Virus record (IMG/VR): IMGVR_UViG_3300032268_000832
Coordinates: 186,001 to 250,000 of that record
Reading direction: 5' to 3' (one strand)
DNA: 64,000 nucleotides
In this document: in pieces, positions 8,174 through 58,599 of the stretch
Position numbering within the stretch: the stretch's first letter is position 1
Layout of the letters: the number at the start of each line of letters is the position of its first letter
Position numbers and translations under genes: made by a program
Notes under the pieces: model-generated
Told to the model about the DNA's origin: nothing
Database searches by the model: none
Seen by the model: the letters and a program-made list of their open reading frames with translations, nothing else

Positions 8174-8291
8174 TTATAAATAAACTTGCATTTTATAAAA
8201 AATGTTAGTATATTTGTAAAAAGATTTAGGATATGCGGGTTTTTTAATGTGTGCCCGCATATTTATAAATCACAAGTTCTTAGAAAAATAT

Positions 8292-8642
8292 GGGGTTGGT
8301 TGGTTTTGATTGGGTATAGTCGTAAACTGTAAGCATGTAGTGCTAGATTGGAAGCACTTTAATCTGTCTATTAAACATTGAATTGACAACGATTTTATCG
8401 TATCTGAAAATTTCCTTGATGAAGCTGTAATGGTTTCTAACGGAGAGTTAGCAGTAGCTTAAAACTGCAAATAGTGGTAATCCACTTGATAGTGATAATT
8501 CACTAAATAATGGTACACCATTCATCTTTATTATTGGATGCCATCGATAATATATTCTGGCGCTAGAAGAAAAATTGTAGCTAAACATGTAGAAAACATT
8601 TGAAGAATACTCAAGACGCGGGTTCGATTCCCGTCAGCTCCT
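8292..8642 (+). ncRNA. ssrA: tmRNA; tag ORF 8385-8462 DNDFIVSENFLDEAVMVSNGELAVA*
   Basis: GGGGTTG/CAGCTCC acceptor with G3-U70, GACGCGGGTTCGATTCCCGT T arm, tag ending AVA-stop. Confidence 0.9.
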
Positions 8643-8787
8643 CGAGTACTTTTTTGGGTGTATTAGGTTAATTCTTATTATACTCAACTCTTTAAAAAGA
8701 TTCAGTTAATTTTACCGAAAACATACTGAAATAAAAACCCCTAGTAAATTGTCGCTTACTAGGGGTTTAACTTTTTAATGCAATACC

Positions 8788-9115: not shown

Positions 9116-9197
9116 AAAAAGTTGTAAAAAAACTTGACATGAGTCGAAACTTTTAGTATCTTTGCATATATTTATTACAATACGTTCTTAAACAACA

Positions 9198-9408
9198 TAT
9201 CTAAAAAGATGATTTCTGCAAACAGATATCTACAACTATGAGAAGGAGTAACTAGTCTCCATCGGACATTACTGACAACATTGAAATACCATGAGTCGCT
9301 ATTGTCACACGAAAGTGAAAAAAACTGGGAGTGTTGTGAGGACACTTTAAATCTACTACCGTGAGCACGTTAGTCACGTAAAACAAAGCGAACTATCATC
9401 TTGAGATA
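9198..9408 (+). ncRNA. Y-RNA-like element copy 2
   Basis: TATCT-AAA-AAGATGAT / ATCATCTT-G-AGATA stem then TTCTGCAA; promoter directly upstream. Confidence 0.6.
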
Positions 9409-9415
9409 ACTTATA

Positions 9416-9494
9416 TGGTTAAAGAATCTTTTCAGCAAACTAAAACTCTATTTTTAATTTGATAAAAAACACAGAAAAAAAGAGATTCTGACCA
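9416..9494 (+). ncRNA. Y-RNA-like element copy 3
   Basis: TGGT-TAA-AGAATCT / AGATTCT-G-ACCA stem then TTCAGCAA. Confidence 0.6.
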
Positions 9495-9497
9495 AAA

Positions 9498-9579
9498 GTG
9501 GTAGAAGTTAAGTCTTTATCTGAAAGATTGCCTTAAAAAGCATTTTCTAGGATAGCTGGTTCATAGCCAGCCTACCGCA
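9498..9579 (+). ncRNA. degenerate tRNA-like RNA
   Basis: acceptor GTGGTAG/CTACCGC and T arm GCTGG-TTCATAG-CCAGC; non-canonical D and anticodon arms. Confidence 0.5.
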
Positions 9580-9586
9580 CTAACAT

Positions 9587-10384: not shown

Positions 10385-10472
10385 CGCGGAATGGTGGAAA
10401 TGGTAACATGCTAGGCTCATAACCTAGAGGAGCAGTAACACTGTGTTGTAGGTTCGAATCCTACTTCCGCAA
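10385..10472 (+). tRNA. tRNA-Met(CAT) with C1:A72 mismatch and long variable arm
   Basis: CTAGG-CTCATAA-CCTAG; variable hairpin GCAG-TAACA-CTGT. Confidence 0.8.
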
Positions 10473-10473
10473 C

Positions 10474-13105: not shown

Positions 13106-13178
13106 GGTTCTATAGTATTAACGTGAATACGCCCGCCTCTAAAACGGAGAAATATCGGTTCGAGTCCGATTAGAACTA
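13106..13178 (+). tRNA. amber suppressor tRNA (anticodon CTA)
   Basis: acceptor GGTTCTA/TAGAACT, loop CTCTAAA, T arm ATCGG-TTCGAGT-CCGAT; anticodon stem only 3 bp. Confidence 0.7.
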
Positions 13179-13238
13179 CAAACACTTTACATTTTTTAGA
13201 AAAATGATATATTTATAAACAAAAAACAAATAGAACAA

Positions 13239-22428: not shown

Positions 22429-22785
22429 ATGAAAGTATTTTTTATTGCTTTTTTAATGTTTTCTTTATCGATTAAAGCCCAAAAACTAAAGAATGAATTA
22501 TTTACGTTTAATGTTGATTATACAAACAAAGAGTTTATAGTTAGGGTTGGTGATATAGATGAAAATAAATCACAAGTTGAAGTTGAAATTAAGTGTTCTA
22601 AAATAATTCTAGACTATAAAAAGGAAAAACATTTTGTGGAAGTTTTTAATATAAAACAACATGTTAATAATAGCAATGTTTTTTTTGGTGGTAAATTGAT
22701 TGAAGGTGAATATGTTATAACGTTAACATATGTTGAAAATGGTAAAAAAATAAAAAAAATAGAAAAAAAATTAATAAAAACTTGA
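22429..22785 (+). CDS. putative secreted protein
   Basis: signal peptide MKVFFIAFLMFSLSIKAQ. Confidence 0.6.
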   Translation: MKVFFIAFLMFSLSIKAQKLKNELFTFNVDYTNKEFIVRVGDIDENKSQVEVEIKCSKIILDYKKEKHFVEVFNIKQHVNNSNVFFGGKLIEGEYVITLTYVENGKKIKKIEKKLIKT

Positions 22786-22866
22786 CTTGTATTAAAATAG
22801 TTAGTATATTTGCATAACTTTTTAAAACAAGGATATATTTATAAACAAATACAAAAATAAAACAAA

Positions 22867-22968
22867 ATGAGAACAATTAACATACATATGATATCGATTT
22901 CGAATTGGAGACGCAATAGTCACCAAATGTCGGGTATGTCTAATTGCCAAGGTGGGACTGAAGTATAA
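22867..22968 (+). CDS. attenuator leader peptide 1 MRTINIHMISISNWRRNSHQMSGMSNCQGGTEV
   Basis: codons 4-19 are all read by tRNAs of the downstream cluster; contains antiterminator GTCGGGT (22929-22935). Confidence 0.85.
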   Translation: MRTINIHMISISNWRRNSHQMSGMSNCQGGTEV

Positions 22969-22993: not shown

Positions 22994-23027
22994 AACCCGA
23001 CTAGTTAAAAGCTTAGTCGGGTTTTTT
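22994..23027 (+). terminator. attenuator terminator 1
   Basis: AACCCGACTA..TAGTCGGGTT plus T-run. Confidence 0.85.
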
Positions 23028-23038
23028 ATTTTAAAACT

Positions 23039-23230
23039 ATGGGTGAATTAGTAAGAAAATTAGGAACTGAAAAAAGTGTCAACTTAGTTAAAGACTTTAA
23101 CCTAATAGTTGACAAGTACAGAAAAATAGCAGATGCCAGTGGATATCACGGAGAGCTAAAATTTCAAAAAGAAGGTGGGTTCACCGTAATATTTGTAGAT
23201 ATTAAAACGGACGATAATTTGGAGGAGTAA
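23039..23230 (+). CDS. hypothetical protein
   Basis: ORF track. Confidence 0.55.
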   Translation: MGELVRKLGTEKSVNLVKDFNLIVDKYRKIADASGYHGELKFQKEGGFTVIFVDIKTDDNLEE

Positions 23231-23308
23231 AGCGTAATGGTTGACCGCTCTAGTCTTGAAAACTAGTCTCGCGAAAGTGGGTTGCAGGTTCGAGTCCTGT
23301 CTCCTCCG
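23221..23308 (+). tRNA. tRNA-Ser(TGA)
   Basis: GGAGGAG/CTCCTCC, CTAGT-CTTGAAA-ACTAG, long variable arm. Confidence 0.9.
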
Positions 23309-23378
23309 CAAAAATTTACACATGCGGTGAATAGTAAAAATTATCCGCACTTTTACAAAATGTAATATATTTATTAGT

Positions 23379-23813
23379 ATGGAAATAAATATAAACGTTA
23401 AAAGGTGTTCCAAATGTCAAGAAGAAAAAAGTATTGATTTATTTGGTGTAAAAAATTATAATAAAGATGGTTTAAATCATTATTGTAAAGAATGTGAAAA
23501 TAATAGGAATAAGGTTAGATATCAAGACCCTATTCAAAAAGAAAAAATAAAGTATAATTCAATTTTAAGAAATTATGGTCTTACTAAAGAAGAATATTTA
23601 TTAAAATTAGATAAACAAGAACATAAATGTTCTATCTGTAGTGATGTTTTAAAAAATGATAAAAAAACACACGTAGACCATTGTCATTTGACTGGTGTTG
23701 TTAGAGATATTTTATGTGATAAATGTAATAAATTATTGGGTAACGTAAAAGAAGATGTTAATTACCTAAAAAATTTAATAAATTACATTGAAAAATATTC
23801 ACCGCAAAAATAA
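23379..23813 (+). mobile_element. endonuclease VII-like homing endonuclease
   Basis: CSIC..HVDHCHLTGVVRDILCDKCNKLLG; inserted in the tRNA array. Confidence 0.8.
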
Positions 23814-23866
23814 GGCGAATAGAAAAGATAATCACCGCAAAAATGCGGTGATTGTAAATTAAACAT

Positions 23867-23939
23867 GGTGGCTATAGTGTAACGGTTAACACGCTAGATT
23901 GTGGTTCTGGAAATGGGAGTTCGATTCTCCTTAGTCACC
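23867..23939 (+). tRNA. tRNA-His(GTG)
   Basis: G-1, CTAGA-TTGTGGT-TCTGG, C73. Confidence 0.9.
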
Positions 23940-23946
23940 CTTTTAT

Positions 23947-24018
23947 ACTTCGCTGGTGAAATGGCTATCATCTTGGTCTCCAAAACCAAGGTTTCAGGTT
24001 CGAGTCCTGAGCGTAGTG
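23947..24018 (+). tRNA. tRNA-Trp(CCA)
   Basis: TTGGT-CTCCAAA-ACCAA. Confidence 0.9.
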
Positions 24019-24027
24019 CTAAAACAT

Positions 24028-24100
24028 AGGCGTGTGGTGAAATTGGTTATCACGCAAGACTGATACTTTTGTATTTCGAGTTCGAGTCTCGACATGCCTA
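24028..24100 (+). tRNA. tRNA-Ile(GAT)
   Basis: CAAGA-CTGATAC-TTTTG. Confidence 0.85.
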
Positions 24101-24105
24101 CAAAC

Positions 24106-24189
24106 TGTGATGTGGATGAATGGTTTAGTCACCAGCCTGATACGCTGGGTGTTTATAACACAATGTGGGTTCGAGTCCCACCGTCACAA
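24106..24189 (+). tRNA. tRNA-Ile(GAT) with long variable arm
   Basis: CCAGC-CTGATAC-GCTGG; variable hairpin GTGTT-TAT-AACAC. Confidence 0.8.
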
Positions 24190-24191
24190 CT

Positions 24192-24425
24192 ATGAAAAGA
24201 CAATATAGTGAAAATGAAAAAGGATTGGTAGAAGCCATAGTTGGATTGTTCATTTTGCTTCCTAACCCACAATTGAAGGGTAAAGAACAAGAAATAATGA
24301 AAATTGCTTTTAAAATTCTGGACGAAATGTTAGATGAAGACTTTGAACCAGAAGAAAATGAAGATGAAGACGATGATGATGGATACGAAGATTACATCAA
24401 GTATATTGTTGAAAAACGTAAATAA
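24192..24425 (+). CDS. acidic hypothetical protein
   Basis: ATG at 24192 after the tRNA. Confidence 0.55.
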   Translation: MKRQYSENEKGLVEAIVGLFILLPNPQLKGKEQEIMKIAFKILDEMLDEDFEPEENEDEDDDDGYEDYIKYIVEKRK

Positions 24426-24499
24426 GGTCCTCTGGCGCAATTGGTTAGCGCAGCGCGCTCATAACGCGACGGTTTCGGGTTCGAGTCCCGAGGGGACCA
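24426..24499 (+). tRNA. tRNA(CAT), elongator Met or Ile2
   Basis: GCGCG-CTCATAA-CGCGA, paired 1-72. Confidence 0.85.
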
Positions 24500-24604
24500 C
24501 ACCCTATCAAATGGTGTAACCACGGGTAAAAACAGCAACGCTGGCGAATGGACCAGAGGCGCACCGTAATTGTGGTACTCGGTGTATTGATAAAAATATA
24601 AAAT

Positions 24605-24690
24605 TCTGGTTTGGCCGAGTGGACGATGGCAGCAGACTGTTAATCTGCTAGGGTACACCCTCAACGTAGGTTCGAATCCTACAGCCAGAG
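24605..24690 (+). tRNA. tRNA-Asn(GTT) with long variable arm
   Basis: GCAGA-CTGTTAA-TCTGC; variable hairpin AGGGT-AC-ACCCT. Confidence 0.8.
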
Positions 24691-24757
24691 CGAAAATTTT
24701 TTTGTTAATCTATTGACTTTTTGTTCGAATTTATTATATTTATAATAAAAACAAATT

Positions 24758-25312
24758 ATGAAAGAAAAAATATTAGAATTAAGAAAAAAAGGTTTAAAAA
24801 TTGATGAAATTGTTAAAGAATTGGGTTGTGCTAAAAGCACCGTATCATATCACATTAACAATAATGGTTTAGGTGGTAAGGTTATAACTGACAGTTTAAT
24901 TTCTAAAATTAATGAGTATTATTTAACTCATAGTAAAGCTGAAACAGCTAAACATTTCGGGATTGGAGCTTCAACTGTAACTAAATATACTGAAAATAAA
25001 AGAGTCTATTTAAGCGAAGAAGAGAGGAAAGAAAAAGCTGTTAAAGCCGTTGTAAAAAGAAGACAAAAAGTCAAAGAGATGGCAGTTGAATACAAAGGCG
25101 GTTCATGTCAGAGATGTGGTTATAATAAATACATAGGTGCTTTAGAGTTTCACCATATGGACCCAAATGAAAAAGATTTTTTAATAAGCAGAAAAGGTCA
25201 TTGTACATCTTGGGAAAAAATAAAAAAAGAATTAGATAAATGTATTTTAGTTTGTGCTAATTGTCACAGAGAAGTACACGAAGAAGAAAGAAATAACAAG
25301 GGGCTGTCGTAG
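24758..25312 (+). mobile_element. HTH-HNH homing endonuclease
   Basis: CQRCGY..LEFHH..CILVCANCHREVH; sits between two tRNA-Asn genes. Confidence 0.85.
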
Positions 25313-25373
25313 CAGCGGTCTAATACGGAGGACTGTTAATCCTTTTACATGGGTTCGAATCCCATCGGCCCCG
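25300..25373 (+). tRNA. tRNA-Asn(GTT)
   Basis: GAGGA-CTGTTAA-TCCTT. Confidence 0.85.
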
Positions 25374-25387
25374 CAAAATAAAAGAAG

Positions 25388-25540
25388 ATGGAAAAGACAA
25401 GTGAAGCTGATATGCAGCGTCTTTATGATTACTTGGATAAAATGGGTGTATCTTATACGGTAGACCGAAATCCAAGTCCAGAAAAGATTGCTAGAATCAA
25501 AGCACAAATTGAAAAGAACAAAAAAATAAGAATGTGTTAA
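25388..25540 (+). CDS. 50-aa hypothetical protein (not in track)
   Basis: manual translation MEKTSEADMQRLYDYLDKMG... Confidence 0.5.
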   Translation: MEKTSEADMQRLYDYLDKMGVSYTVDRNPSPEKIARIKAQIEKNKKIRMC

Positions 25541-25640
25541 TGCTGATAAACTACAACAGCACCAGACGAAAAACTGGCGTGGAGCATGGGACTAGTTAAC
25601 CACCACAATTGTAGGAGAATACCCTACCACATTCACAAAT

Positions 25641-25713
25641 GCCGAGGCTTATAGGAAAAGAGCCATCCCTCATAAAGATGGTCAAGTCGGTTCGACTCCG
25701 ATACTCGGTACCA
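25641..25713 (+). tRNA. tRNA-Met(CAT), atypical D arm
   Basis: loop CTCATAA, T arm GTCGG-TTCGACT-CCGAT, encoded CCA. Confidence 0.7.
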
Positions 25714-25718
25714 AAATT

Positions 25719-25791
25719 GGCTCTATCGTTCAACTGGATAGGACCTCGGTCTACGAAATCGAAAATACAGGTTCGAATCCTGTTAGAGTCA
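25719..25791 (+). tRNA. tRNA-Arg(ACG)
   Basis: TCGGT-CTACGAA-ATCGA. Confidence 0.9.
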
Positions 25792-25840
25792 CAACATCAG
25801 TCAAATCTATAATTTATATGTATCATTTGGCTAACAATAT

Positions 25841-25913
25841 GCCTCCATAGCATAAATGGAAATGCAACATCCTTCTAAGATGTCCAATCGGGGTTCGAAT
25901 CCCTGTGGGGGTA
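25841..25913 (+). tRNA. tRNA-Arg(TCT)
   Basis: ACATC-CTTCTAA-GATGT. Confidence 0.9.
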
Positions 25914-26117
25914 CAAATAAAATAGCAATCAAGGTTTGTTTCACCTTCAAGATATTCCTGAAAAGAAACTAGGTGTGTTGATAGGGGTAGCCTCCCAACA
26001 GTGACTGATTAAATTCAAGGTAGATACGGACTGGTACAGTGGTGACTTACACACGGAATTCCACTAATCCCTTTGTAGCCCGTCACGACCCAAGGGCGGG
26101 ATTGTTATTTTATTTAT

Positions 26118-26204
26118 GGAGAGTTGCCAGAGTGGTAATGGAGCGGATTGCTAATCCGTGGTCGTTAGTTCGGCCCATGGGTTCGAATCCCATACTCTCC
26201 ACCA
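26118..26204 (+). tRNA. tRNA-Ser(GCT)
   Basis: GCGGA-TTGCTAA-TCCGT, long variable arm, encoded CCA. Confidence 0.9.
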
Positions 26205-49168: not shown

Positions 49169-50392
49169 ATGAGCAAACAACTAACACACGAGTTTCTAGT
49201 AGAAAATGGGTTAATACTTTTTGAAACCATAATTGGTTCTCAAGCATATGGTACCCAAACACCTACTAGTGATGTAGACAAAAAATTCGTATACATATTA
49301 CCTATGGATTATATCTTGGGTACTGGATATGTTGAACAAATAAATGTAAATAAAGACTACACAGGTTGGGAACTTAGACGTTTCCTAGAATTAATGGAAA
49401 CAAACAACCCAACGGTTCTAGAACTTTTAAACAGCCCAGGAGACTGTATAATCAGCAAACACCCTTTGTTTGACCTAATCCTTGCACATAAGGAGGATTT
49501 CATAACAAAACTATGTAAAAATAGCTTTGGTGGATACGCTAGACAACAAATTGTTAAAGCTAAAGGTCTTAACAAGAAACAAAACTGGGAAAAAGACAAA
49601 GTAACTAGAAAAGACTTGTTAGATTTCTGTTATGTTATTCAAGGTGATAAATCAATCCCATGGAGAGCGTGGAATGCTAACAAATATGATGAAAAATTTG
49701 TTGGTGCTGTGAATATCCCAAATGCGAGAGATACCTACGCTTTATTTTATGACAGCGTTGCTGAAATGCTTCATTCTGAAAATACTGATGAAGAACTTAG
49801 AGAGACTTATAAAGAAGCACTGAGAAAAGCTGGTAAATCAATGGGTATGGGTTATAAAGGACTTATCAATACTGGTCATGAAGATGAAGATGGTAAGATT
49901 AACTACGGTATCTCAAATCAATTACGTCTTTCTAGCGTACCTAAAGGTGAGAAAGTTATTGCAACAATAGTGTATAACAAAGATGGTTATTCAGAACATT
50001 GTAAAGACTATAAAGAGTATCAAGAATGGCTTGAAAACCGTAACGAAGCTCGTTATGTTGAAACACAAGAACATGGGCAAAGAATTGATGGTAAGAATAT
50101 GATGCACTGTATGCGTCTTATCAGAATGGCAACAGAAATTGGTCAAGGTAAAGGGATTCAAGTAAGAAGAGAAGATAGAGAATATCTATTATCAATTCGT
50201 AGAGGTGAACTAGACTTAGATAAATTAATCGAAGAAGCGGATAATGCAATTAAAAATATGGATGAAGTTTTTGATAATTCCACTCTACCTGACAGAGTCC
50301 CTAAGGGTTTGGTAAATGCTCTTTTAGTTACTATCAGAAGAGAATTTTATGATTTGCCAATATCGGCAACAACACTTGAAAAAAGACTTTAA
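49169..50392 (+). CDS. Pol beta-like nucleotidyltransferase (YcgL/RlaP-like)
   Basis: GSQAYGTQTPTSDVD, NPTVLE, KNMMHCMRL. Confidence 0.8.
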   Translation: MSKQLTHEFLVENGLILFETIIGSQAYGTQTPTSDVDKKFVYILPMDYILGTGYVEQINVNKDYTGWELRRFLELMETNNPTVLELLNSPGDCIISKHPLFDLILAHKEDFITKLCKNSFGGYARQQIVKAKGLNKKQNWEKDKVTRKDLLDFCYVIQGDKSIPWRAWNANKYDEKFVGAVNIPNARDTYALFYDSVAEMLHSENTDEELRETYKEALRKAGKSMGMGYKGLINTGHEDEDGKINYGISNQLRLSSVPKGEKVIATIVYNKDGYSEHCKDYKEYQEWLENRNEARYVETQEHGQRIDGKNMMHCMRLIRMATEIGQGKGIQVRREDREYLLSIRRGELDLDKLIEEADNAIKNMDEVFDNSTLPDRVPKGLVNALLVTIRREFYDLPISATTLEKRL

Positions 50393-51894: not shown

Positions 51895-51945
51895 AAAAAG
51901 TTGCAAAAAAACTTGACTTGTATTAAAACAGTTCGTATATTTGCA
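51895..51945 (+). promoter_or_regulatory. promoter of the Cys/Val/Leu tRNA operon
   Basis: AAAGTTGCAAAAAACTTGACTTGTATTAAAACAGTTCGTATATTTGCA, near-identical to 53493-53543. Confidence 0.75.
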
Positions 51946-51982: not shown

Positions 51983-52063
51983 ATGAGAAATACTTTTAAC
52001 ATATTAGTCCTTTTAAGCTTATGCTTGCTAGTGGTAAACACAGCAGGGCTTTGCGTATGTTAA
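51983..52063 (+). CDS. attenuator leader peptide 2 MRNTFNILVLLSLCLLVVNTAGLCVC
   Basis: 10 of codons 8-18 are Leu/Val/Cys; antiterminator GGGCTTT (52046-52052). Confidence 0.85.
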   Translation: MRNTFNILVLLSLCLLVVNTAGLCVC

Positions 52064-52093: not shown

Positions 52094-52125
52094 AAAAAGC
52101 CCATCCTAACCAGATGGGTTTTTTT
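52094..52125 (+). terminator. attenuator terminator 2
   Basis: AAAAAGCCCATC-CTAACCA-GATGGGTTTTTTT. Confidence 0.85.
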
Positions 52126-52138
52126 ATTGAATAATAAT

Positions 52139-52219
52139 GCCGTGGTTCCTGAGTGGTCAAAGGGGGCGGACTGCAAATCCGCTGCGAAAGCTTCGTGGGT
52201 TCGAATCCCTCTCACGGCT
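52139..52219 (+). tRNA. tRNA-Cys(GCA) with extended variable arm
   Basis: GCGGA-CTGCAAA-TCCGC; variable TGCGAAAGCTTC; U73. Confidence 0.85.
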
Positions 52220-52240
52220 CAATGATAAACTGAAAAAAAA

Positions 52241-52621
52241 ATGGAAGGTAAAGATTACTTAGTTGGTTCATTTAGAACCAAAAACGGTGCTCAAGTTAAC
52301 GTTTATAGAAATATTAAAAATATGGAAAAGAATGAAATTAAAAAGGACTTGTATAAGTCAAAGAATCTGGCTAAATTTAGCCACTATGTAAACGGAAACC
52401 TGTATTATAAGGTAGACGTGATGGACGGAACTTATCAGTTCCCAATAAAAACAGTACAGAAATCATATGTAATGGATACTAGACAAGTTGAAAAGATTCC
52501 AACACTAGTATTAGCAGAAGATTTAGGAACAACAAGTTTTGACGCTGAAATAAAGGGTTCTGAATTGATTAGATGGATTGAAAAAGCTATCGATAATGAA
52601 GATTTTATAAAAGTAGGGTAA
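52241..52621 (+). CDS. hypothetical protein
   Basis: ORF track. Confidence 0.65.
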   Translation: MEGKDYLVGSFRTKNGAQVNVYRNIKNMEKNEIKKDLYKSKNLAKFSHYVNGNLYYKVDVMDGTYQFPIKTVQKSYVMDTRQVEKIPTLVLAEDLGTTSFDAEIKGSELIRWIEKAIDNEDFIKVG

Positions 52622-52634
52622 AACCTACTTAAAT

Positions 52635-52723
52635 GGGACTATGGTGTAGTTGGTTAAACATCCCATCCTTACAAGATGGAGACGAGAAGTATAACGCTGG
52701 TTCGAATCCAGCTAGTCCTACCA
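52635..52723 (+). tRNA. tRNA-Val(TAC) with 16-nt variable region
   Basis: CCATC-CTTACAA-GATGG; encoded CCA. Confidence 0.8.
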
Positions 52724-52731
52724 AAATAAAT

Positions 52732-52818
52732 GGCCTTGTGGCGAAACTGGCAGTACGCACTAGACTTAAAATCTAGGGTCCCGAAGGGGGCGTGTGGGTT
52801 CGACTCCCACCAAGGCTA
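52732..52818 (+). tRNA. tRNA-Leu(TAA)
   Basis: CTAGA-CTTAAAA-TCTAG, long variable arm. Confidence 0.9.
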
Positions 52819-52826
52819 CACAATAT

Positions 52827-52909
52827 GCGGATATGGTGGAATGGTAGACACACTAGCCTTAGAAGCTAGGGCTCATTTGGGCATGCGAGTTCGAGTCTCG
52901 CTATCCGTA
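52827..52909 (+). tRNA. tRNA-Leu(TAG)
   Basis: CTAGC-CTTAGAA-GCTAG, long variable arm. Confidence 0.9.
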
Positions 52910-52915
52910 CAAATC

Positions 52916-52990
52916 GCATCTGTAACTCAGTGGTTCAGTAGTGCTTCCTTTACACGGAAGAAGTCGGGGGTTCGAATCCCTCCAGATGCA
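52916..52990 (+). tRNA. tRNA-Val(TAC)
   Basis: CTTCC-TTTACAC-GGAAG. Confidence 0.9.
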
Positions 52991-52992
52991 CT

Positions 52993-53083
52993 AAAAGATA
53001 GTTTCAGCAAACAAAAACTGGTTAAAAATTCACACTTAAAATGCGAACGAAGCGGTTCAAATCCGCAAAATATAACTATCTTG
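52993..53083 (+). ncRNA. Y-RNA-like element copy 5 with tRNA-derived cargo
   Basis: AAGATAGTT / AACTATCTT-G, TCAGCAA; internal CTTAAAA loop and T arm GCGG-TTCAAAT-CCGC. Confidence 0.65.
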
Positions 53084-53088
53084 TTTTT

Positions 53089-53172
53089 GGCCGAGTGGCG
53101 TAATTGGTAGCCGCGCCAGTCTAAGAAGCTGGTTCTCGAAAGGGAGTGTGGGTTCGAGTCCCACCTTGGTCA
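53089..53172 (+). tRNA. tRNA-Leu(AAG)
   Basis: CCAGT-CTAAGAA-GCTGG, long variable arm. Confidence 0.85.
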
Positions 53173-53201
53173 CAAATTGAAATATCAACATATTTATTAG
53201 T

Positions 53202-53492: not shown

Positions 53493-53543
53493 AAAAAAGT
53501 TGCAAAAAAACTTGACTTGTATTAAAACAGTTCGTATCTTTGC
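53493..53543 (+). promoter_or_regulatory. promoter of the Phe/Glu/Asp/Ala tRNA operon
   Basis: TTGACTTGTATTAAAACAGTTCGTATCTTTGCA. Confidence 0.75.
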
Positions 53544-53623
53544 ACTATAATTAAAAACAAAGAAAAAAAATGACTTTTTAAAAAAAGTCGCATATTTATA
53601 AACAAATACAAAAAGAAAACACA

Positions 53624-53713
53624 ATGAGAACTTTAACTAACATATTTGATTTCGCATTTTTTGCAGCCGAGGAGGATTACTCTTTCGGAAGGTCAAACAC
53701 TGTCATAAGTTAA
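53624..53713 (+). CDS. attenuator leader peptide 3 MRTLTNIFDFAFFAAEEDYSFGRSNTVIS
   Basis: codons 8-18 are all Phe/Asp/Ala/Glu; antiterminator AGGTCAAAC (53690-53698). Confidence 0.88.
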   Translation: MRTLTNIFDFAFFAAEEDYSFGRSNTVIS

Positions 53714-53738
53714 CGTTTAAATTAACGATATAAATGAT

Positions 53739-53768
53739 AAGTCTGACCTAATAAGTCAGACTTTTTTT
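53739..53768 (+). terminator. attenuator terminator 3
   Basis: AAGTCTGAC-CTAATAA-GTCAGACTTTTTTT. Confidence 0.85.
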
Positions 53769-53783
53769 ATGCAATAAATAATT

Positions 53784-53856
53784 GGTTCTGTAGCTCAGTT
53801 GGTAGAGCACTAGATTGAAGCTCTAGGTGTCGTGGGTTCGAGTCCCACTGGAACCA
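53784..53856 (+). tRNA. tRNA-Phe(GAA)
   Basis: CTAGA-TTGAAGC-TCTAG. Confidence 0.9.
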
Positions 53857-53865
53857 CAAAAAAAT

Positions 53866-53940
53866 GGCCCCGTCTTCTAAACGGAATAGGAAGCCACCCT
53901 TTCAAGGTGTGTAATGCGAGTTCGAGTCTCGTCAGGGCTA
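53866..53940 (+). tRNA. tRNA-Glu(TTC)
   Basis: CACC-CTTTCAA-GGTG. Confidence 0.85.
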
Positions 53941-53977
53941 CAATCTGGTTAAGATTCCAGTAATCAAAAATCTAAAT

Positions 53978-54050
53978 GGTCTATTCGTCTAGTCGGTCAG
54001 GACGTGCCCCTTTCACGGGTAAAACACGGGTTCGAATCCCGTATAGACTA
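53978..54050 (+). tRNA. tRNA-Glu(TTC)
   Basis: TGCCC-CTTTCAC-GGGTA. Confidence 0.9.
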
Positions 54051-54059
54051 CAATAAAAA

Positions 54060-54131
54060 GGTCCTATCGTTCATCGGCTAGGATGCCTCCCTGTCACGGA
54101 GGTGAGGAGGGTTCGATTCCCTCTAGGACCG
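54060..54131 (+). tRNA. tRNA-Asp(GTC)
   Basis: CCTCC-CTGTCAC-GGAGG. Confidence 0.9.
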
Positions 54132-54215
54132 CTGGTAACATCTGGTAATTTTAATACCAGTAAAAACCATTAAAAACAGGGATTATTAGTTTTATCTGGT
54201 AATGTCTGGTAATTT

Positions 54216-54287
54216 GGGGTCATAGCTCAACGGCTGAGCGCTTCCCTTGCACGGAAGAGGATGTGGGTTCGAATCCCATTGGCTCCA
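54216..54287 (+). tRNA. tRNA-Ala(TGC)
   Basis: CTTCC-CTTGCAC-GGAAG; G3-U70. Confidence 0.9.
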
Positions 54288-54340
54288 CTAATTAGTTTCT
54301 ATCTTTTTAATTTTTAAAGATATTTATAGATAAAAAAAGT

Positions 54341-58431: not shown

Positions 58432-58507
58432 ATGAGGATAGCTCAGTTGGTAGAGCGCTCGGTGGTTCGCTGCCGAGAGGTTGCAGGTTCGAGTCCTGCT
58501 CCTTGTA
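58432..58507 (+). ncRNA. tRNA-like RNA with the anticodon loop replaced by a UUCG tetraloop
   Basis: canonical D and T arms; CTCGGTGG-TTCG-CTGCCGAG. Confidence 0.7.
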
Positions 58508-58599
58508 CAAAAAAATTTTTAACTATTATTTAACAAAAAAATTTTGTAGTTACAAAAATACTTAGTATATTTGCATTGTAAAACATAAACAATAACAAA

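What the first reader, a model, noticed from the sequence alone, without database searches (positions are those of the whole stretch)
53624..54287. Attenuator 3: FDFAFFAAEED leader before Phe, Glu, Glu, Asp and Ala tRNAs
All 11 of codons 8-18 encode Phe, Asp, Ala or Glu, exactly the four downstream tRNA identities. AGGTCAAAC..TGTCAT (from 53690) is largely complementary to ATGATAAGTCTGACCT, which includes the terminator 5' arm.
Basis: partly seen in the sequence, partly recalled or inferred. Interest (0 to 1): 0.87.

Follow-up and report, generated by a model that had tools for sequence, protein, structure and literature searches.

The report
Leader-peptide attenuators controlling phage tRNA operons
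An uncultured 306-kb freshwater phage places, in front of each of its four tRNA gene clusters, a tiny gene whose codons call for exactly the tRNAs in that cluster, followed by a stop-or-go RNA switch, so the phage probably makes more tRNA only when ribosomes run short of it.

Summary
The window is part of a 306,463-bp uncultured jumbo phage.

Each unit has this order:
- a Bacteroidota-type promoter
- an A-rich leader
- a 26-33-codon ORF
- an intrinsic terminator
- a tRNA array, which starts 13-15 nt after the T-run in units B, C and D

The ORFs carry runs of 16, 10 of 12, 11 and 17 codons drawn only from the amino acids of their own array. Together the four arrays partition all 20 amino acids.

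Every regulatory codon can be read by a tRNA of its own operon, and rare codons are enriched.

In all units, ORF nt ~62-84 is complementary to the terminator's 5' arm, which would form an antiterminator. Across 33 leaders (about 20 sequence types) from related metagenomic phages, this segment co-varies with the terminator (0 of 100,000 permutations).

I read this as classical ribosome-mediated attenuation applied to tRNA operons in a virus. I found no description of it in the literature, Rfam or GenBank phages.

Translation, stalling and readthrough are inferred, not shown. A region 1:2 anti-antiterminator is not statistically supported.

The parts
53512..53542 (+). Unit C promoter-like site: -33 TTGAC (53512-16), 20-nt spacer, -7 TATCTTTG (53535-42)
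   Evidence: A 16-mer at this site is identical in units A, B and C. It is also conserved before unit D and in the relatives. The match to the Bacteroidota TTG/TAnnTTTG consensus rests on my own knowledge, not on a test here.
53592..53609 (+). Conserved 5'-UTR box ATATTTATAAACAAATAC
   Evidence: Present about 15-35 nt before the ATG in most units and relatives. Its role is unknown.
53624..53713 (+). Leader ORF C, 29 codons plus TAA
   Evidence: Conserved in relatives, with synonymous Phe and Glu codon changes.
53645..53677 (+). Regulatory run, codons 8-18: F D F A F F A A E E D
   Evidence: Unique extreme among 1,138 small ORFs in the genome. Every codon is readable by a tRNA of this operon.
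53690..53706 (+). Region 2: the antiterminator 5' strand, lying inside the ORF (codons 23-28)
   Evidence: The motif AAGGUCAA is kept in two different reading frames among relatives.
53734..53749 (+). Region 3: the antiterminator 3' strand, overlapping the terminator's 5' arm
53739..53768 (+). Intrinsic terminator: 9-bp stem (53739-47 with 53755-63), 7-nt loop, T-run to 53768
   Evidence: -10.9 kcal/mol.
53784..53857 (+). tRNA-Phe(GAA)
53866..53941 (+). tRNA, most likely Glu(UUC); ARAGORN calls it SeC(tca)
53978..54051 (+). tRNA-Glu(UUC)
54060..54132 (+). tRNA-Asp(GUC)
54216..54288 (+). tRNA-Ala(UGC)
51913..51943 (+). Unit B promoter-like site (TTGAC ... TATATTTG)
51983..52063 (+). Leader ORF B: MRNTFNILVLLSLCLLVVNTAGLCVC
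52045..52057 (+). Unit B region 2: GGGCUUU pairs with AAAGCCC of the terminator arm
52094..52125 (+). Unit B intrinsic terminator
52139..53173 (+). tRNA array B: Cys-GCA, Val-UAC, Leu-UAA, Leu-UAG, Val-UAC, Leu-AAG, with one 126-aa ORF inside
22782..22812 (+). Unit A promoter-like site (TTGAC ... TATATTTG)
22867..22968 (+). Leader ORF A: MRTINIHMISISNWRRNSHQMSGMSNCQGGTEV
22928..22940 (+). Unit A region 2: GUCGGGU pairs with ACCCGAC of the terminator arm
22994..23027 (+). Unit A intrinsic terminator
23221..26204 (+). tRNA array A: Ser-UGA, His, Trp, Ile x2, CAU (Met or Ile2), Asn x2, Arg-ACG, Arg-UCU, Ser-GCU, interspersed with Endonuclease VII and HNH genes

Best explanation
This is a ribosome-mediated (leader-peptide) transcription attenuator that gates a phage tRNA operon. 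It is one of four such gates in the genome.

Proposed mechanism:
1. Transcription starts at a strong promoter of the host (Bacteroidota) type.
2. A ribosome translates the 29-codon leader.
3. If the tRNAs for Phe, Asp, Ala and Glu are plentiful, the ribosome runs on over region 2 (53690-53706). The terminator hairpin (53739-53763 plus T-run) then forms and transcription stops 15 nt before tRNA-Phe.
4. If any of these tRNAs is scarce, the ribosome stalls within codons 8-18 and region 2 stays free. Region 2 pairs with the terminator's 5' arm as an antiterminator, and RNA polymerase reads into the Phe-Glu-Glu-Asp-Ala tRNA genes.
5. The newly made tRNAs relieve the stall, which closes a negative-feedback loop on tRNA supply.

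Shown from sequence:
- the ORFs, their codon composition and their conservation
- the terminators
- the co-varying region 2 / region 3 complementarity
- the lack of room for a promoter before the first tRNA

Inferred:
- that the ORF is translated
- that stalling raises readthrough
- that the signal is tRNA availability
- which polymerase transcribes the unit
For: (1) Codon sets match tRNA sets in four paralogous units, one of them (D) just outside the window at genome 250970-252929.
- The amino-acid sets are A {S,H,W,I,M,N,R}, B {C,V,L}, C {F,E,D,A} and D {P,K,G,Q,Y,T}. Together they cover all 20 amino acids without overlap.
- The in-set runs are 16, 6 (10 of 12), 11 and 17 codons.
- A, C and D are the unique maxima among 1,138 small ORFs in the genome, and off-diagonal matches are near zero.
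- A blind scan of the whole genome and about 100 other loci recovers only these ORFs.

(2) The match holds at the codon level. Every regulatory codon is readable by an own-operon tRNA, and isoacceptors are sampled separately:
- AGA and CGC for Arg-UCU and Arg-ACG
- TCG and AGT for Ser-UGA and Ser-GCU
- GGC and GGG for Gly-GCC and Gly-UCC
- TTA, CTT and CTA for the three Leu tRNAs

Rare codons are enriched (0 of 20,000 simulations).

(3) Relatives conserve composition rather than nucleotides.
- There are synonymous switches, including TCG to AGY.
- 110 of 114 free run positions in 11 unit-D leaders stay in-set, against 64 of 163 in the tails.
- Unit-B leaders differ in residue order but keep L/V/C.

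(4) There is a terminator in every unit. In B, C and D the first tRNA starts 13-15 nt after the T-run.

(5) An antiterminator is supported in every unit.
- Region 2 lies at ORF nt ~62-84 in all four units and pairs with the terminator's 5' arm on transcripts truncated before the 3' arm.
- Shuffle tests give p of about 0.002-0.05.
- Across 33 leaders, the mean duplex energy of a region 2 with its own region 3 is -13.6 kcal/mol, against -9.05 with other leaders' region 3 (0 of 20,000 permutations).
- Across 20 sequence types, 0 of 100,000 permutations reach the observed value.
- Pairs with wholly different sequences stay complementary: GUCGGG/CCCGAC, GGUCAAGG/CCUUGACC, GAGACG/CGUCUC, and GUGGUCG/CGACCAC in a unit-C relative.
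- The unit-C region 2 motif is kept in two different reading frames.

(6) The antiterminator fold and the terminator fold are close in energy: -15.5 against -16.8 kcal/mol for unit C.
Against: - There is no expression or functional data. Metatranscriptome contigs touching the locus are sparse, come from relatives, and could be DNA.
- At thermodynamic equilibrium the terminator wins wherever the ribosome is placed, so the model needs kinetic, co-transcriptional control.
- A region 1:2 stem appears in the MFE folds but is no better than shuffles. Without it, an untranslated leader might default to readthrough.
- In units A and D the stop codon lies 20-25 nt beyond region 2. A ribosome parked at the stop would not mask region 2.
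- Extra tRNAs in some relatives' arrays are not mirrored in the leaders: His in G003 array D, Thr and Arg-CCU in some A arrays.
- For unit C alone the antiterminator is only marginally significant and depends on including loop and flank bases.
- The permutation tests do not fully correct for shared descent.
Confidence: 0.8

Rival explanations
1. The switch is the same, but the physiological signal is amino-acid starvation (uncharged tRNA), as in the trp, his and phe operons. It would not be a shortage of tRNA molecules.
For: Classical attenuators respond to the charged-tRNA level (established knowledge). The architecture here is the same.
Against: The regulated products are tRNAs, and more tRNA does not relieve amino-acid starvation. 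The leaders sample individual isoacceptors of one amino acid (two Arg, two Ser, two Gly, three Leu codon families), matching the operon's anticodons. That sampling is pointless for sensing an amino acid.
Confidence: 0.15
2. The hairpin is a constitutive, leaky terminator or a processing signal. The short ORF affects something else, such as transcript stability, Rho access or RNase processing of the tRNA precursor, rather than termination.
For: The terminator is favoured at equilibrium in every ribosome position tested. No RNA data show regulated readthrough.
Against: This does not explain why a segment inside the ORF stays complementary to the terminator's 5' arm through many sequence replacements. 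It also does not explain why that segment sits at the same ORF position in all four units.
Confidence: 0.07
3. The ORFs are chance ORFs, or small peptides that act in trans, and are unrelated to the tRNAs.
For: Hydrophobic L/V/C runs like that of unit B are not rare among random AT-rich ORFs (19 of 1,138).
Against: Four out of four sets match and partition the 20 amino acids. The runs have chance probabilities of about 1e-8 to 1e-10. Composition, not residue order, is conserved. The C-terminal parts change reading frame while the RNA motif is kept.
Confidence: 0.02
4. The leader RNA binds tRNAs directly, T-box-like, using the displayed codons, without being translated.
For: The codons match the operon's anticodons.
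Against: There is no T-box match in Rfam. All codons lie in one frame behind an ATG and before a stop. Ser switches between TCG and AGY, which keeps the amino acid but not the base-pairing.
Confidence: 0.02

Closest known systems
Leader-peptide attenuators of amino-acid biosynthesis operons (trpL, hisL, leuL, pheL; multivalent thrL and ilvL)
   Same: A short ORF with a run of regulatory codons, an intrinsic terminator, an antiterminator that uses the terminator's 5' arm, rare-codon use, and leaders that sense several amino acids at once.
   Different: The regulated genes are tRNAs, not enzymes. The element is viral. One leader senses 3-7 amino acids, and four leaders together cover all 20. There is no Rfam leader match. 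The region 1:2 stem is not supported.
pheM leader of the E. coli pheST operon (attenuation of an aminoacyl-tRNA synthetase)
   Same: A translation-apparatus gene is controlled by ribosome stalling at codons for its own amino acid. This is the closest match in logic.
   Different: The target there is the charging enzyme and the leader senses one amino acid. Here the target is the tRNA itself, so the feedback acts on tRNA supply.
T-box riboswitches
   Same: Both sense tRNA status and switch between a terminator and an antiterminator upstream of translation-related genes.
   Different: T-boxes bind uncharged tRNA directly and need no translation. No T-box motif is present here, and the evidence points to a translated ORF.
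Phage tRNA arrays as a buffer against host tRNA loss (T4, T5, vibriophage and mycobacteriophage tRNA clusters; viral tRNAs rescuing infection from PARIS, bioRxiv 10.1101/2024.01.02.573894)
   Same: A large phage-encoded tRNA complement that could plausibly replace depleted or cleaved host tRNAs.
   Different: In my literature searches I found no report of demand-sensing control for those arrays. Here each array has its own sensor.

Membership tests
Ribosome-mediated (leader-peptide) transcription attenuator | A short translatable ORF in the 5' leader, downstream of a promoter | tested here: met
   There is an ATG ORF of 26-33 codons 80-110 nt after a conserved promoter-like site in all four units. 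It is conserved in relatives with synonymous changes. Translation itself was not shown.
Ribosome-mediated (leader-peptide) transcription attenuator | A cluster of codons for the amino acid(s) relevant to the regulated genes | tested here: met
   Runs of 16, 10 of 12, 11 and 17 in-set codons; unique extremes in the genome.
Ribosome-mediated (leader-peptide) transcription attenuator | An intrinsic terminator between the leader ORF and the regulated genes | tested here: met
   The first tRNA starts 13-15 nt after the T-run in units B, C and D.
Ribosome-mediated (leader-peptide) transcription attenuator | A mutually exclusive antiterminator that pairs the terminator's 5' arm with a segment a translating ribosome would cover | tested here: met
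   Region 2 lies inside the ORF at nt ~62-84 in all units. It co-varies with the terminator.
Ribosome-mediated (leader-peptide) transcription attenuator | A region 1:2 anti-antiterminator or pause hairpin overlapping the regulatory codons | tested here: inconclusive
   It is present in the MFE folds but is no stronger than dinucleotide shuffles, p = 0.08-0.7.
Ribosome-mediated (leader-peptide) transcription attenuator | Readthrough rises when the cognate charged tRNA is limiting | not testable with these tools
   This needs in vitro or in vivo assays. The public RNA runs are uninformative.
Rfam leader families (Trp_leader, His_leader, Leu_leader, Thr_leader, Phe_leader and related) | A covariance-model score at or above the family's gathering threshold | tested here: not met
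   There was no leader hit at gathering threshold in the 64-kb window. The best sub-threshold hits were Trp_leader at 14.9 bits against a threshold of 41 and L10_leader at 20.2 against 44, both driven by the terminator.
T-box riboswitch | A specifier loop plus the conserved T-box sequence (Rfam RF00230) | tested here: not met
   No match, even at E <= 10.

The most novel reading that the evidence does not exclude
The phage carries a complete, demand-driven 'tRNA homeostat'. Four leader-peptide sensors between them read codons for all 20 amino acids, and for individual isoacceptors. Each sensor switches on only the tRNA operon whose products are running short. This would let the virus detect and repair loss of host tRNAs, whether from host shut-off, codon-usage mismatch or anticodon-nuclease defences. 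In effect the ribosome would serve as a sensor of tRNA supply rather than of amino-acid supply.
Probability: 0.55. Interest if true: 0.93.

Novelty: new variant of a known kind. Interest (0 to 1): 0.88.

Why it matters
Leader-peptide attenuation is a textbook mechanism, but it is known for amino-acid biosynthesis and a few synthetase genes. It has not been reported for tRNA genes or in viruses.

If this is confirmed, it would have several consequences:
- tRNA supply itself would be shown to be under codon-specific feedback control.
- It would explain how a jumbo phage regulates a full tRNA complement instead of expressing it blindly.
- It would link phage tRNA arrays mechanistically to host tRNA depletion and tRNA-targeting defences.
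- It would provide four compact natural sensors, about 250 nt each and each tuned to a defined subset of codons, that could be used to read out tRNA availability.
- It would extend ribosome-mediated attenuation to Bacteroidota-type expression signals, where few such elements are documented.

Tried and rejected
- **Equilibrium folding with a ribosome mask at every codon:** the terminator always wins, so this cannot discriminate between models. I replaced it with folds of transcripts truncated before the terminator's 3' arm.
- **RNAalifold on a MAFFT alignment of 20 truncated unit-A leaders:** no structure was predicted, because the alignment shifts the pairing register by one column between sequence types. 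I used an alignment-free test instead, comparing each region 2 with its own and with other leaders' region 3.
- **Region 1:2 stem:** not better than shuffles, so I do not claim it.
- **Rfam:** no leader or T-box membership.
- **GenBank phages:**
  - No relative carries the element; only tRNA-level hits were found.
  - The one protein-level relative, LR756511.1 (595 kb), has 60 tRNAs in mixed order, with no such promoters or leaders in the 108 kb I examined.
- **RNA evidence:**
  - The RNA runs hold only about 10% of the sampled words, mostly tRNA-like.
  - One 177-nt contig from a freshwater metatranscriptome spans 53622-53799 at about 96% identity. It cannot be distinguished from DNA carry-over.
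- **Other tRNAs in the window:** the Met tRNAs (9587, 10385), tRNA-CUA/Cys (13106, 13846) and Phe/odd tRNA (57769, 58432) have no such leader.
- **Host identification:** a genome-contig hit in a MAG labelled Gammaproteobacteria looks like a mis-binned phage contig, so it does not identify the host.
- **Literature:** five full-text searches found no description of attenuators in front of tRNA genes.

Full report
**What the window is**

The window is bases 186001-250000 of a single 306,463-bp contig with 30.9% G+C. The whole contig carries 38 tRNA genes, and a tmRNA gene lies in the window. Near-identical DNA occurs in lake and freshwater metagenomes. GenBank phages contain no close relative. 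It is therefore an uncultured jumbo phage. Its promoters have the form TTGAC, then about 19-20 nt, then TAnnTTTG. By my own knowledge of Bacteroidota promoters, this points to a host in that phylum. That is an inference, not a test.

**The observation**

The ORF 53624-53713 encodes MRTLTNIFDFAFFAAEEDYSFGRSNTVIS. Codons 8-18 are all Phe, Asp, Ala or Glu.

Five tRNAs follow: Phe-GAA, a second tRNA, Glu-UUC, Asp-GUC and Ala-UGC. ARAGORN labels the second tRNA SeC(tca). The canonical cloverleaf register gives a CUUUCAA loop, which is Glu, and its ortholog in a relative is called Glu.

The terminator is 53739-53763 plus a T-run.

- 53690-95 with 53744-49
- 53697-98 with 53741-42
- 53701-06 with 53734-39

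On a transcript cut before the terminator's 3' arm, this long-range helix is the predicted fold. Its duplex energy is -14.3 kcal/mol against -9.4 +/- 2.2 for shuffles.

**It is one of four units**

The same 16-nt promoter core occurs three times in the window and once more just beyond it. Each copy is followed by an A-rich leader, a short ORF, a terminator and a tRNA array.

| Unit | Leader peptide | tRNAs in the array |
|---|---|---|
| A | MRTINIHMISISNWRRNSH... | Ser, His, Trp, Ile, Ile, CAU, Asn, Asn, Arg, Arg, Ser |
| B | MRNTFNILVLLSLCLLVV... | Cys, Val, Leu, Leu, Val, Leu |
| C | the finding (above) | Phe, Glu-like, Glu, Asp, Ala |
| D (genome 250970-252929) | MKTQTTYQTQYQPKGGKP... | Pro, Lys, Lys, Pro, Gly, Gln, Tyr, Thr, Gly |

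The four tRNA sets partition the 20 amino acids without overlap. 31 of the 38 tRNAs sit behind a leader.

Each leader is rich only in its own set. In-set counts in codons 2-20 are 17, 10, 11 and 17, against 0-6 for the other sets. A, C and D are the single most extreme of 1,138 small ORFs in the genome. A blind scan for any short ORF enriched in the identities of downstream tRNAs, run over the whole genome and about 100 other loci, returns only these leaders and their orthologs.

**Codon level**

Every regulatory codon can be read by a tRNA of its own operon. Where the operon holds two or three isoacceptors, the leader contains a codon for each:
- AGA and CGC for the two Arg tRNAs
- TCG and AGT for the two Ser tRNAs
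- GGC and GGG for the two Gly tRNAs
- TTA/TTG, CTT and CTA for the three Leu tRNAs

The runs are enriched in codons that are rare in this genome, such as TCG 5%, CGC 2%, GGC 3% and CCG 4%. No simulation out of 20,000 was as extreme. Sensitive classical attenuators show the same rare-codon use, although constraints from RNA structure could also contribute.

**Relatives**

Pattern scans recovered the units in many IMG/VR and metagenome contigs from fresh, estuarine and marine water. Four of these are jumbo contigs of 232-369 kb (G001-G004), and all four carry all four units.

The regulatory runs are conserved as amino-acid or tRNA sets rather than as nucleotides:
- There are synonymous switches, including Ser TCG to AGY.
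- Phe and Glu codons vary synonymously.
- Unit-B leaders have different residue orders but keep L/V/C.
- In 11 unit-D leaders, 110 of 114 positions not fixed by my search pattern stay in-set while varying among K, T and Q. In the tails the figure is 64 of 163.

By contrast, the peptide after the run is poorly conserved. In unit C it even changes reading frame (GRSN against EGQ) while the RNA motif AAGGUCAA is retained.

**The RNA switch**

In all four units the best partner of the terminator's 5' arm lies at ORF nt ~62-84, which is inside the ORF and just after the run.

Among relatives this segment and the terminator change together. The pairs observed are:
- GUCGGG/CCCGAC
- GGUCAAGG/CCUUGACC
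- GUAG-CAGGU/ACCUGACUAC
- UGAGUC/GACUCA
- GAGACG/CGUCUC
- GCUA-CGGGU/ACCCGAUAGC
- ACUGGGU/ACCCAGU becoming GCUGGGU/ACCCAGC
- for unit C, AGGUCA/UGACCU against GUGGUCG/CGACCAC

An alignment-free test pairs each region 2 window with its own terminator arm and with the arms of other leaders.
- Over 33 leaders the means are -13.6 kcal/mol (own) and -9.05 (others), with 0 of 20,000 permutations as extreme.
- The result holds with one representative per sequence type: 20 types, 0 of 100,000 permutations.
- Shared descent is not fully removed by these tests, but the number of unrelated sequence pairs is large.

The antiterminator and terminator folds are close in energy. This suits a kinetic switch.

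**Geometry and mechanism**

A ribosome stalled with its A site on most regulatory codons leaves region 2 free. A ribosome that continues covers region 2 while the polymerase is making regions 3 and 4.

In units B, C and D the first tRNA starts 13-15 nt after the T-run. That leaves no room for a separate promoter, so those tRNAs must be made by readthrough.

I therefore conclude that scarcity of any tRNA of the set causes a stall, the antiterminator forms, and the operon is transcribed. Abundance leads to termination. This is negative feedback on tRNA supply.

The following are not shown:
- translation of the ORF
- the stall response
- the identity of the polymerase
- the behaviour of an untranslated leader

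**Weak points**

- At equilibrium the terminator always wins.
- The region 1:2 stem seen in the MFE folds is not better than chance.
- In units A and D the stop codon lies beyond region 2.
- Some relatives' arrays have gained tRNAs that are not mirrored in the leader.
- Unit C's own antiterminator is the weakest of the four.
- RNA-seq support is negligible.

**Comparison with known systems**

The element works like the trp, his, leu, phe, thr and ilv attenuators. In logic it is closest to the pheM-pheST leader.
- It meets the structural criteria of the leader-peptide attenuator class, except for an unproven 1:2 stem.
- It is not a member of any Rfam leader family, nor of the T-box family.
- Its targets are tRNA genes in a virus, which is new.

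Five literature searches found no report of such an arrangement. The only GenBank relative at protein level, the 595-kb LR756511.1, lacks it in the regions I examined.

**Verdict**

The finding is real and much larger than reported. It is a conserved, four-part system of leader-peptide attenuators governing a complete phage tRNA complement. It is a new variant of a known mechanism and merits experimental testing.

Noticed in passing
8292-8645: A phage-encoded tmRNA gene (Rfam, 72 bits). It sits behind a promoter of the same TTG...TAnnTTTG type (about 8186-8217).
   Followed up: no
13106-13179: A tRNA with a CUA anticodon (amber suppressor; ARAGORN labels it 'Pyl'). The genome nevertheless reads as standard code: coverage by ORFs of 100 aa or more is 0.889 under code 11, against 0.910 with TAG as sense and 0.908 with TGA as sense. 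Leader D ends TAG-TAA.
   Followed up: partly
58432-58508: A tRNA with an 8-nt anticodon loop (four-base 'ttcg' anticodon, Glu/Arg-like). This is the shape of a possible frameshift suppressor.
   Followed up: partly
10385-10473; 24106-24190; 24605-24691; 52139-52220; 52635-52723: Oversized tRNAs of 82-89 nt for Met, Ile, Asn, Cys and Val, called without introns. These identities normally have a short variable region, so here they carry long variable regions. tRNA-Pro at genome 251254 is 96 nt.
   Followed up: no
52992-53088 and about 25620-25718: tRNA-like remnants that neither ARAGORN nor Rfam calls. Each has a T-arm-like GGTTC(A/G)A..CC motif flanked by complementary ends. The second ends in ...GGTACCA and has a CTCATAA loop.
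   Followed up: no
9128-9586: A strong promoter of the same type, followed by about 400 nt without an ORF before tRNA-Met. This may be an unrecognised structured RNA or a long tRNA precursor leader. It contains no leader-peptide ORF.
   Followed up: no
49169-50389: A protein with an RlaP domain (RNA-repair-pathway nucleotidyltransferase, E = 4e-22), just upstream of the tRNA units. This fits a theme of tRNA and RNA maintenance.
   Followed up: no
23379-23810 and 24758-25309: Endonuclease VII and HTH+HNH (homing-endonuclease-like) genes lie between the tRNAs of array A. An own promoter-like site is at 24713.
   Followed up: no
23039-23230: A conserved 63-aa ORF with no Pfam match is the first gene after attenuator A. 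It overlaps the start of tRNA-Ser and is conserved in G003 and L148.
   Followed up: partly
L148 (CAUYTX010000233.1) 330-2530: A 20.6-kb contig with 30.6% G+C, binned into a MAG labelled Gammaproteobacteria, carries a complete unit A (leader MATMNIHMISISNWRRNSH..., terminator, tRNAs). It is most likely a mis-binned phage contig.
   Followed up: partly
53622-53799 (run X42): A 177-nt contig from a freshwater metatranscriptome spans the leader ORF, the terminator and the start of tRNA-Phe at about 96% identity. Both differences inside the ORF are synonymous Phe changes. It could be a readthrough transcript or DNA carry-over.
   Followed up: partly
genome 285822 (outside the window): A fifth copy of the promoter type precedes a stretch that has no ORF and higher G+C. 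An odd tRNA call lies about 860 nt downstream.
   Followed up: no
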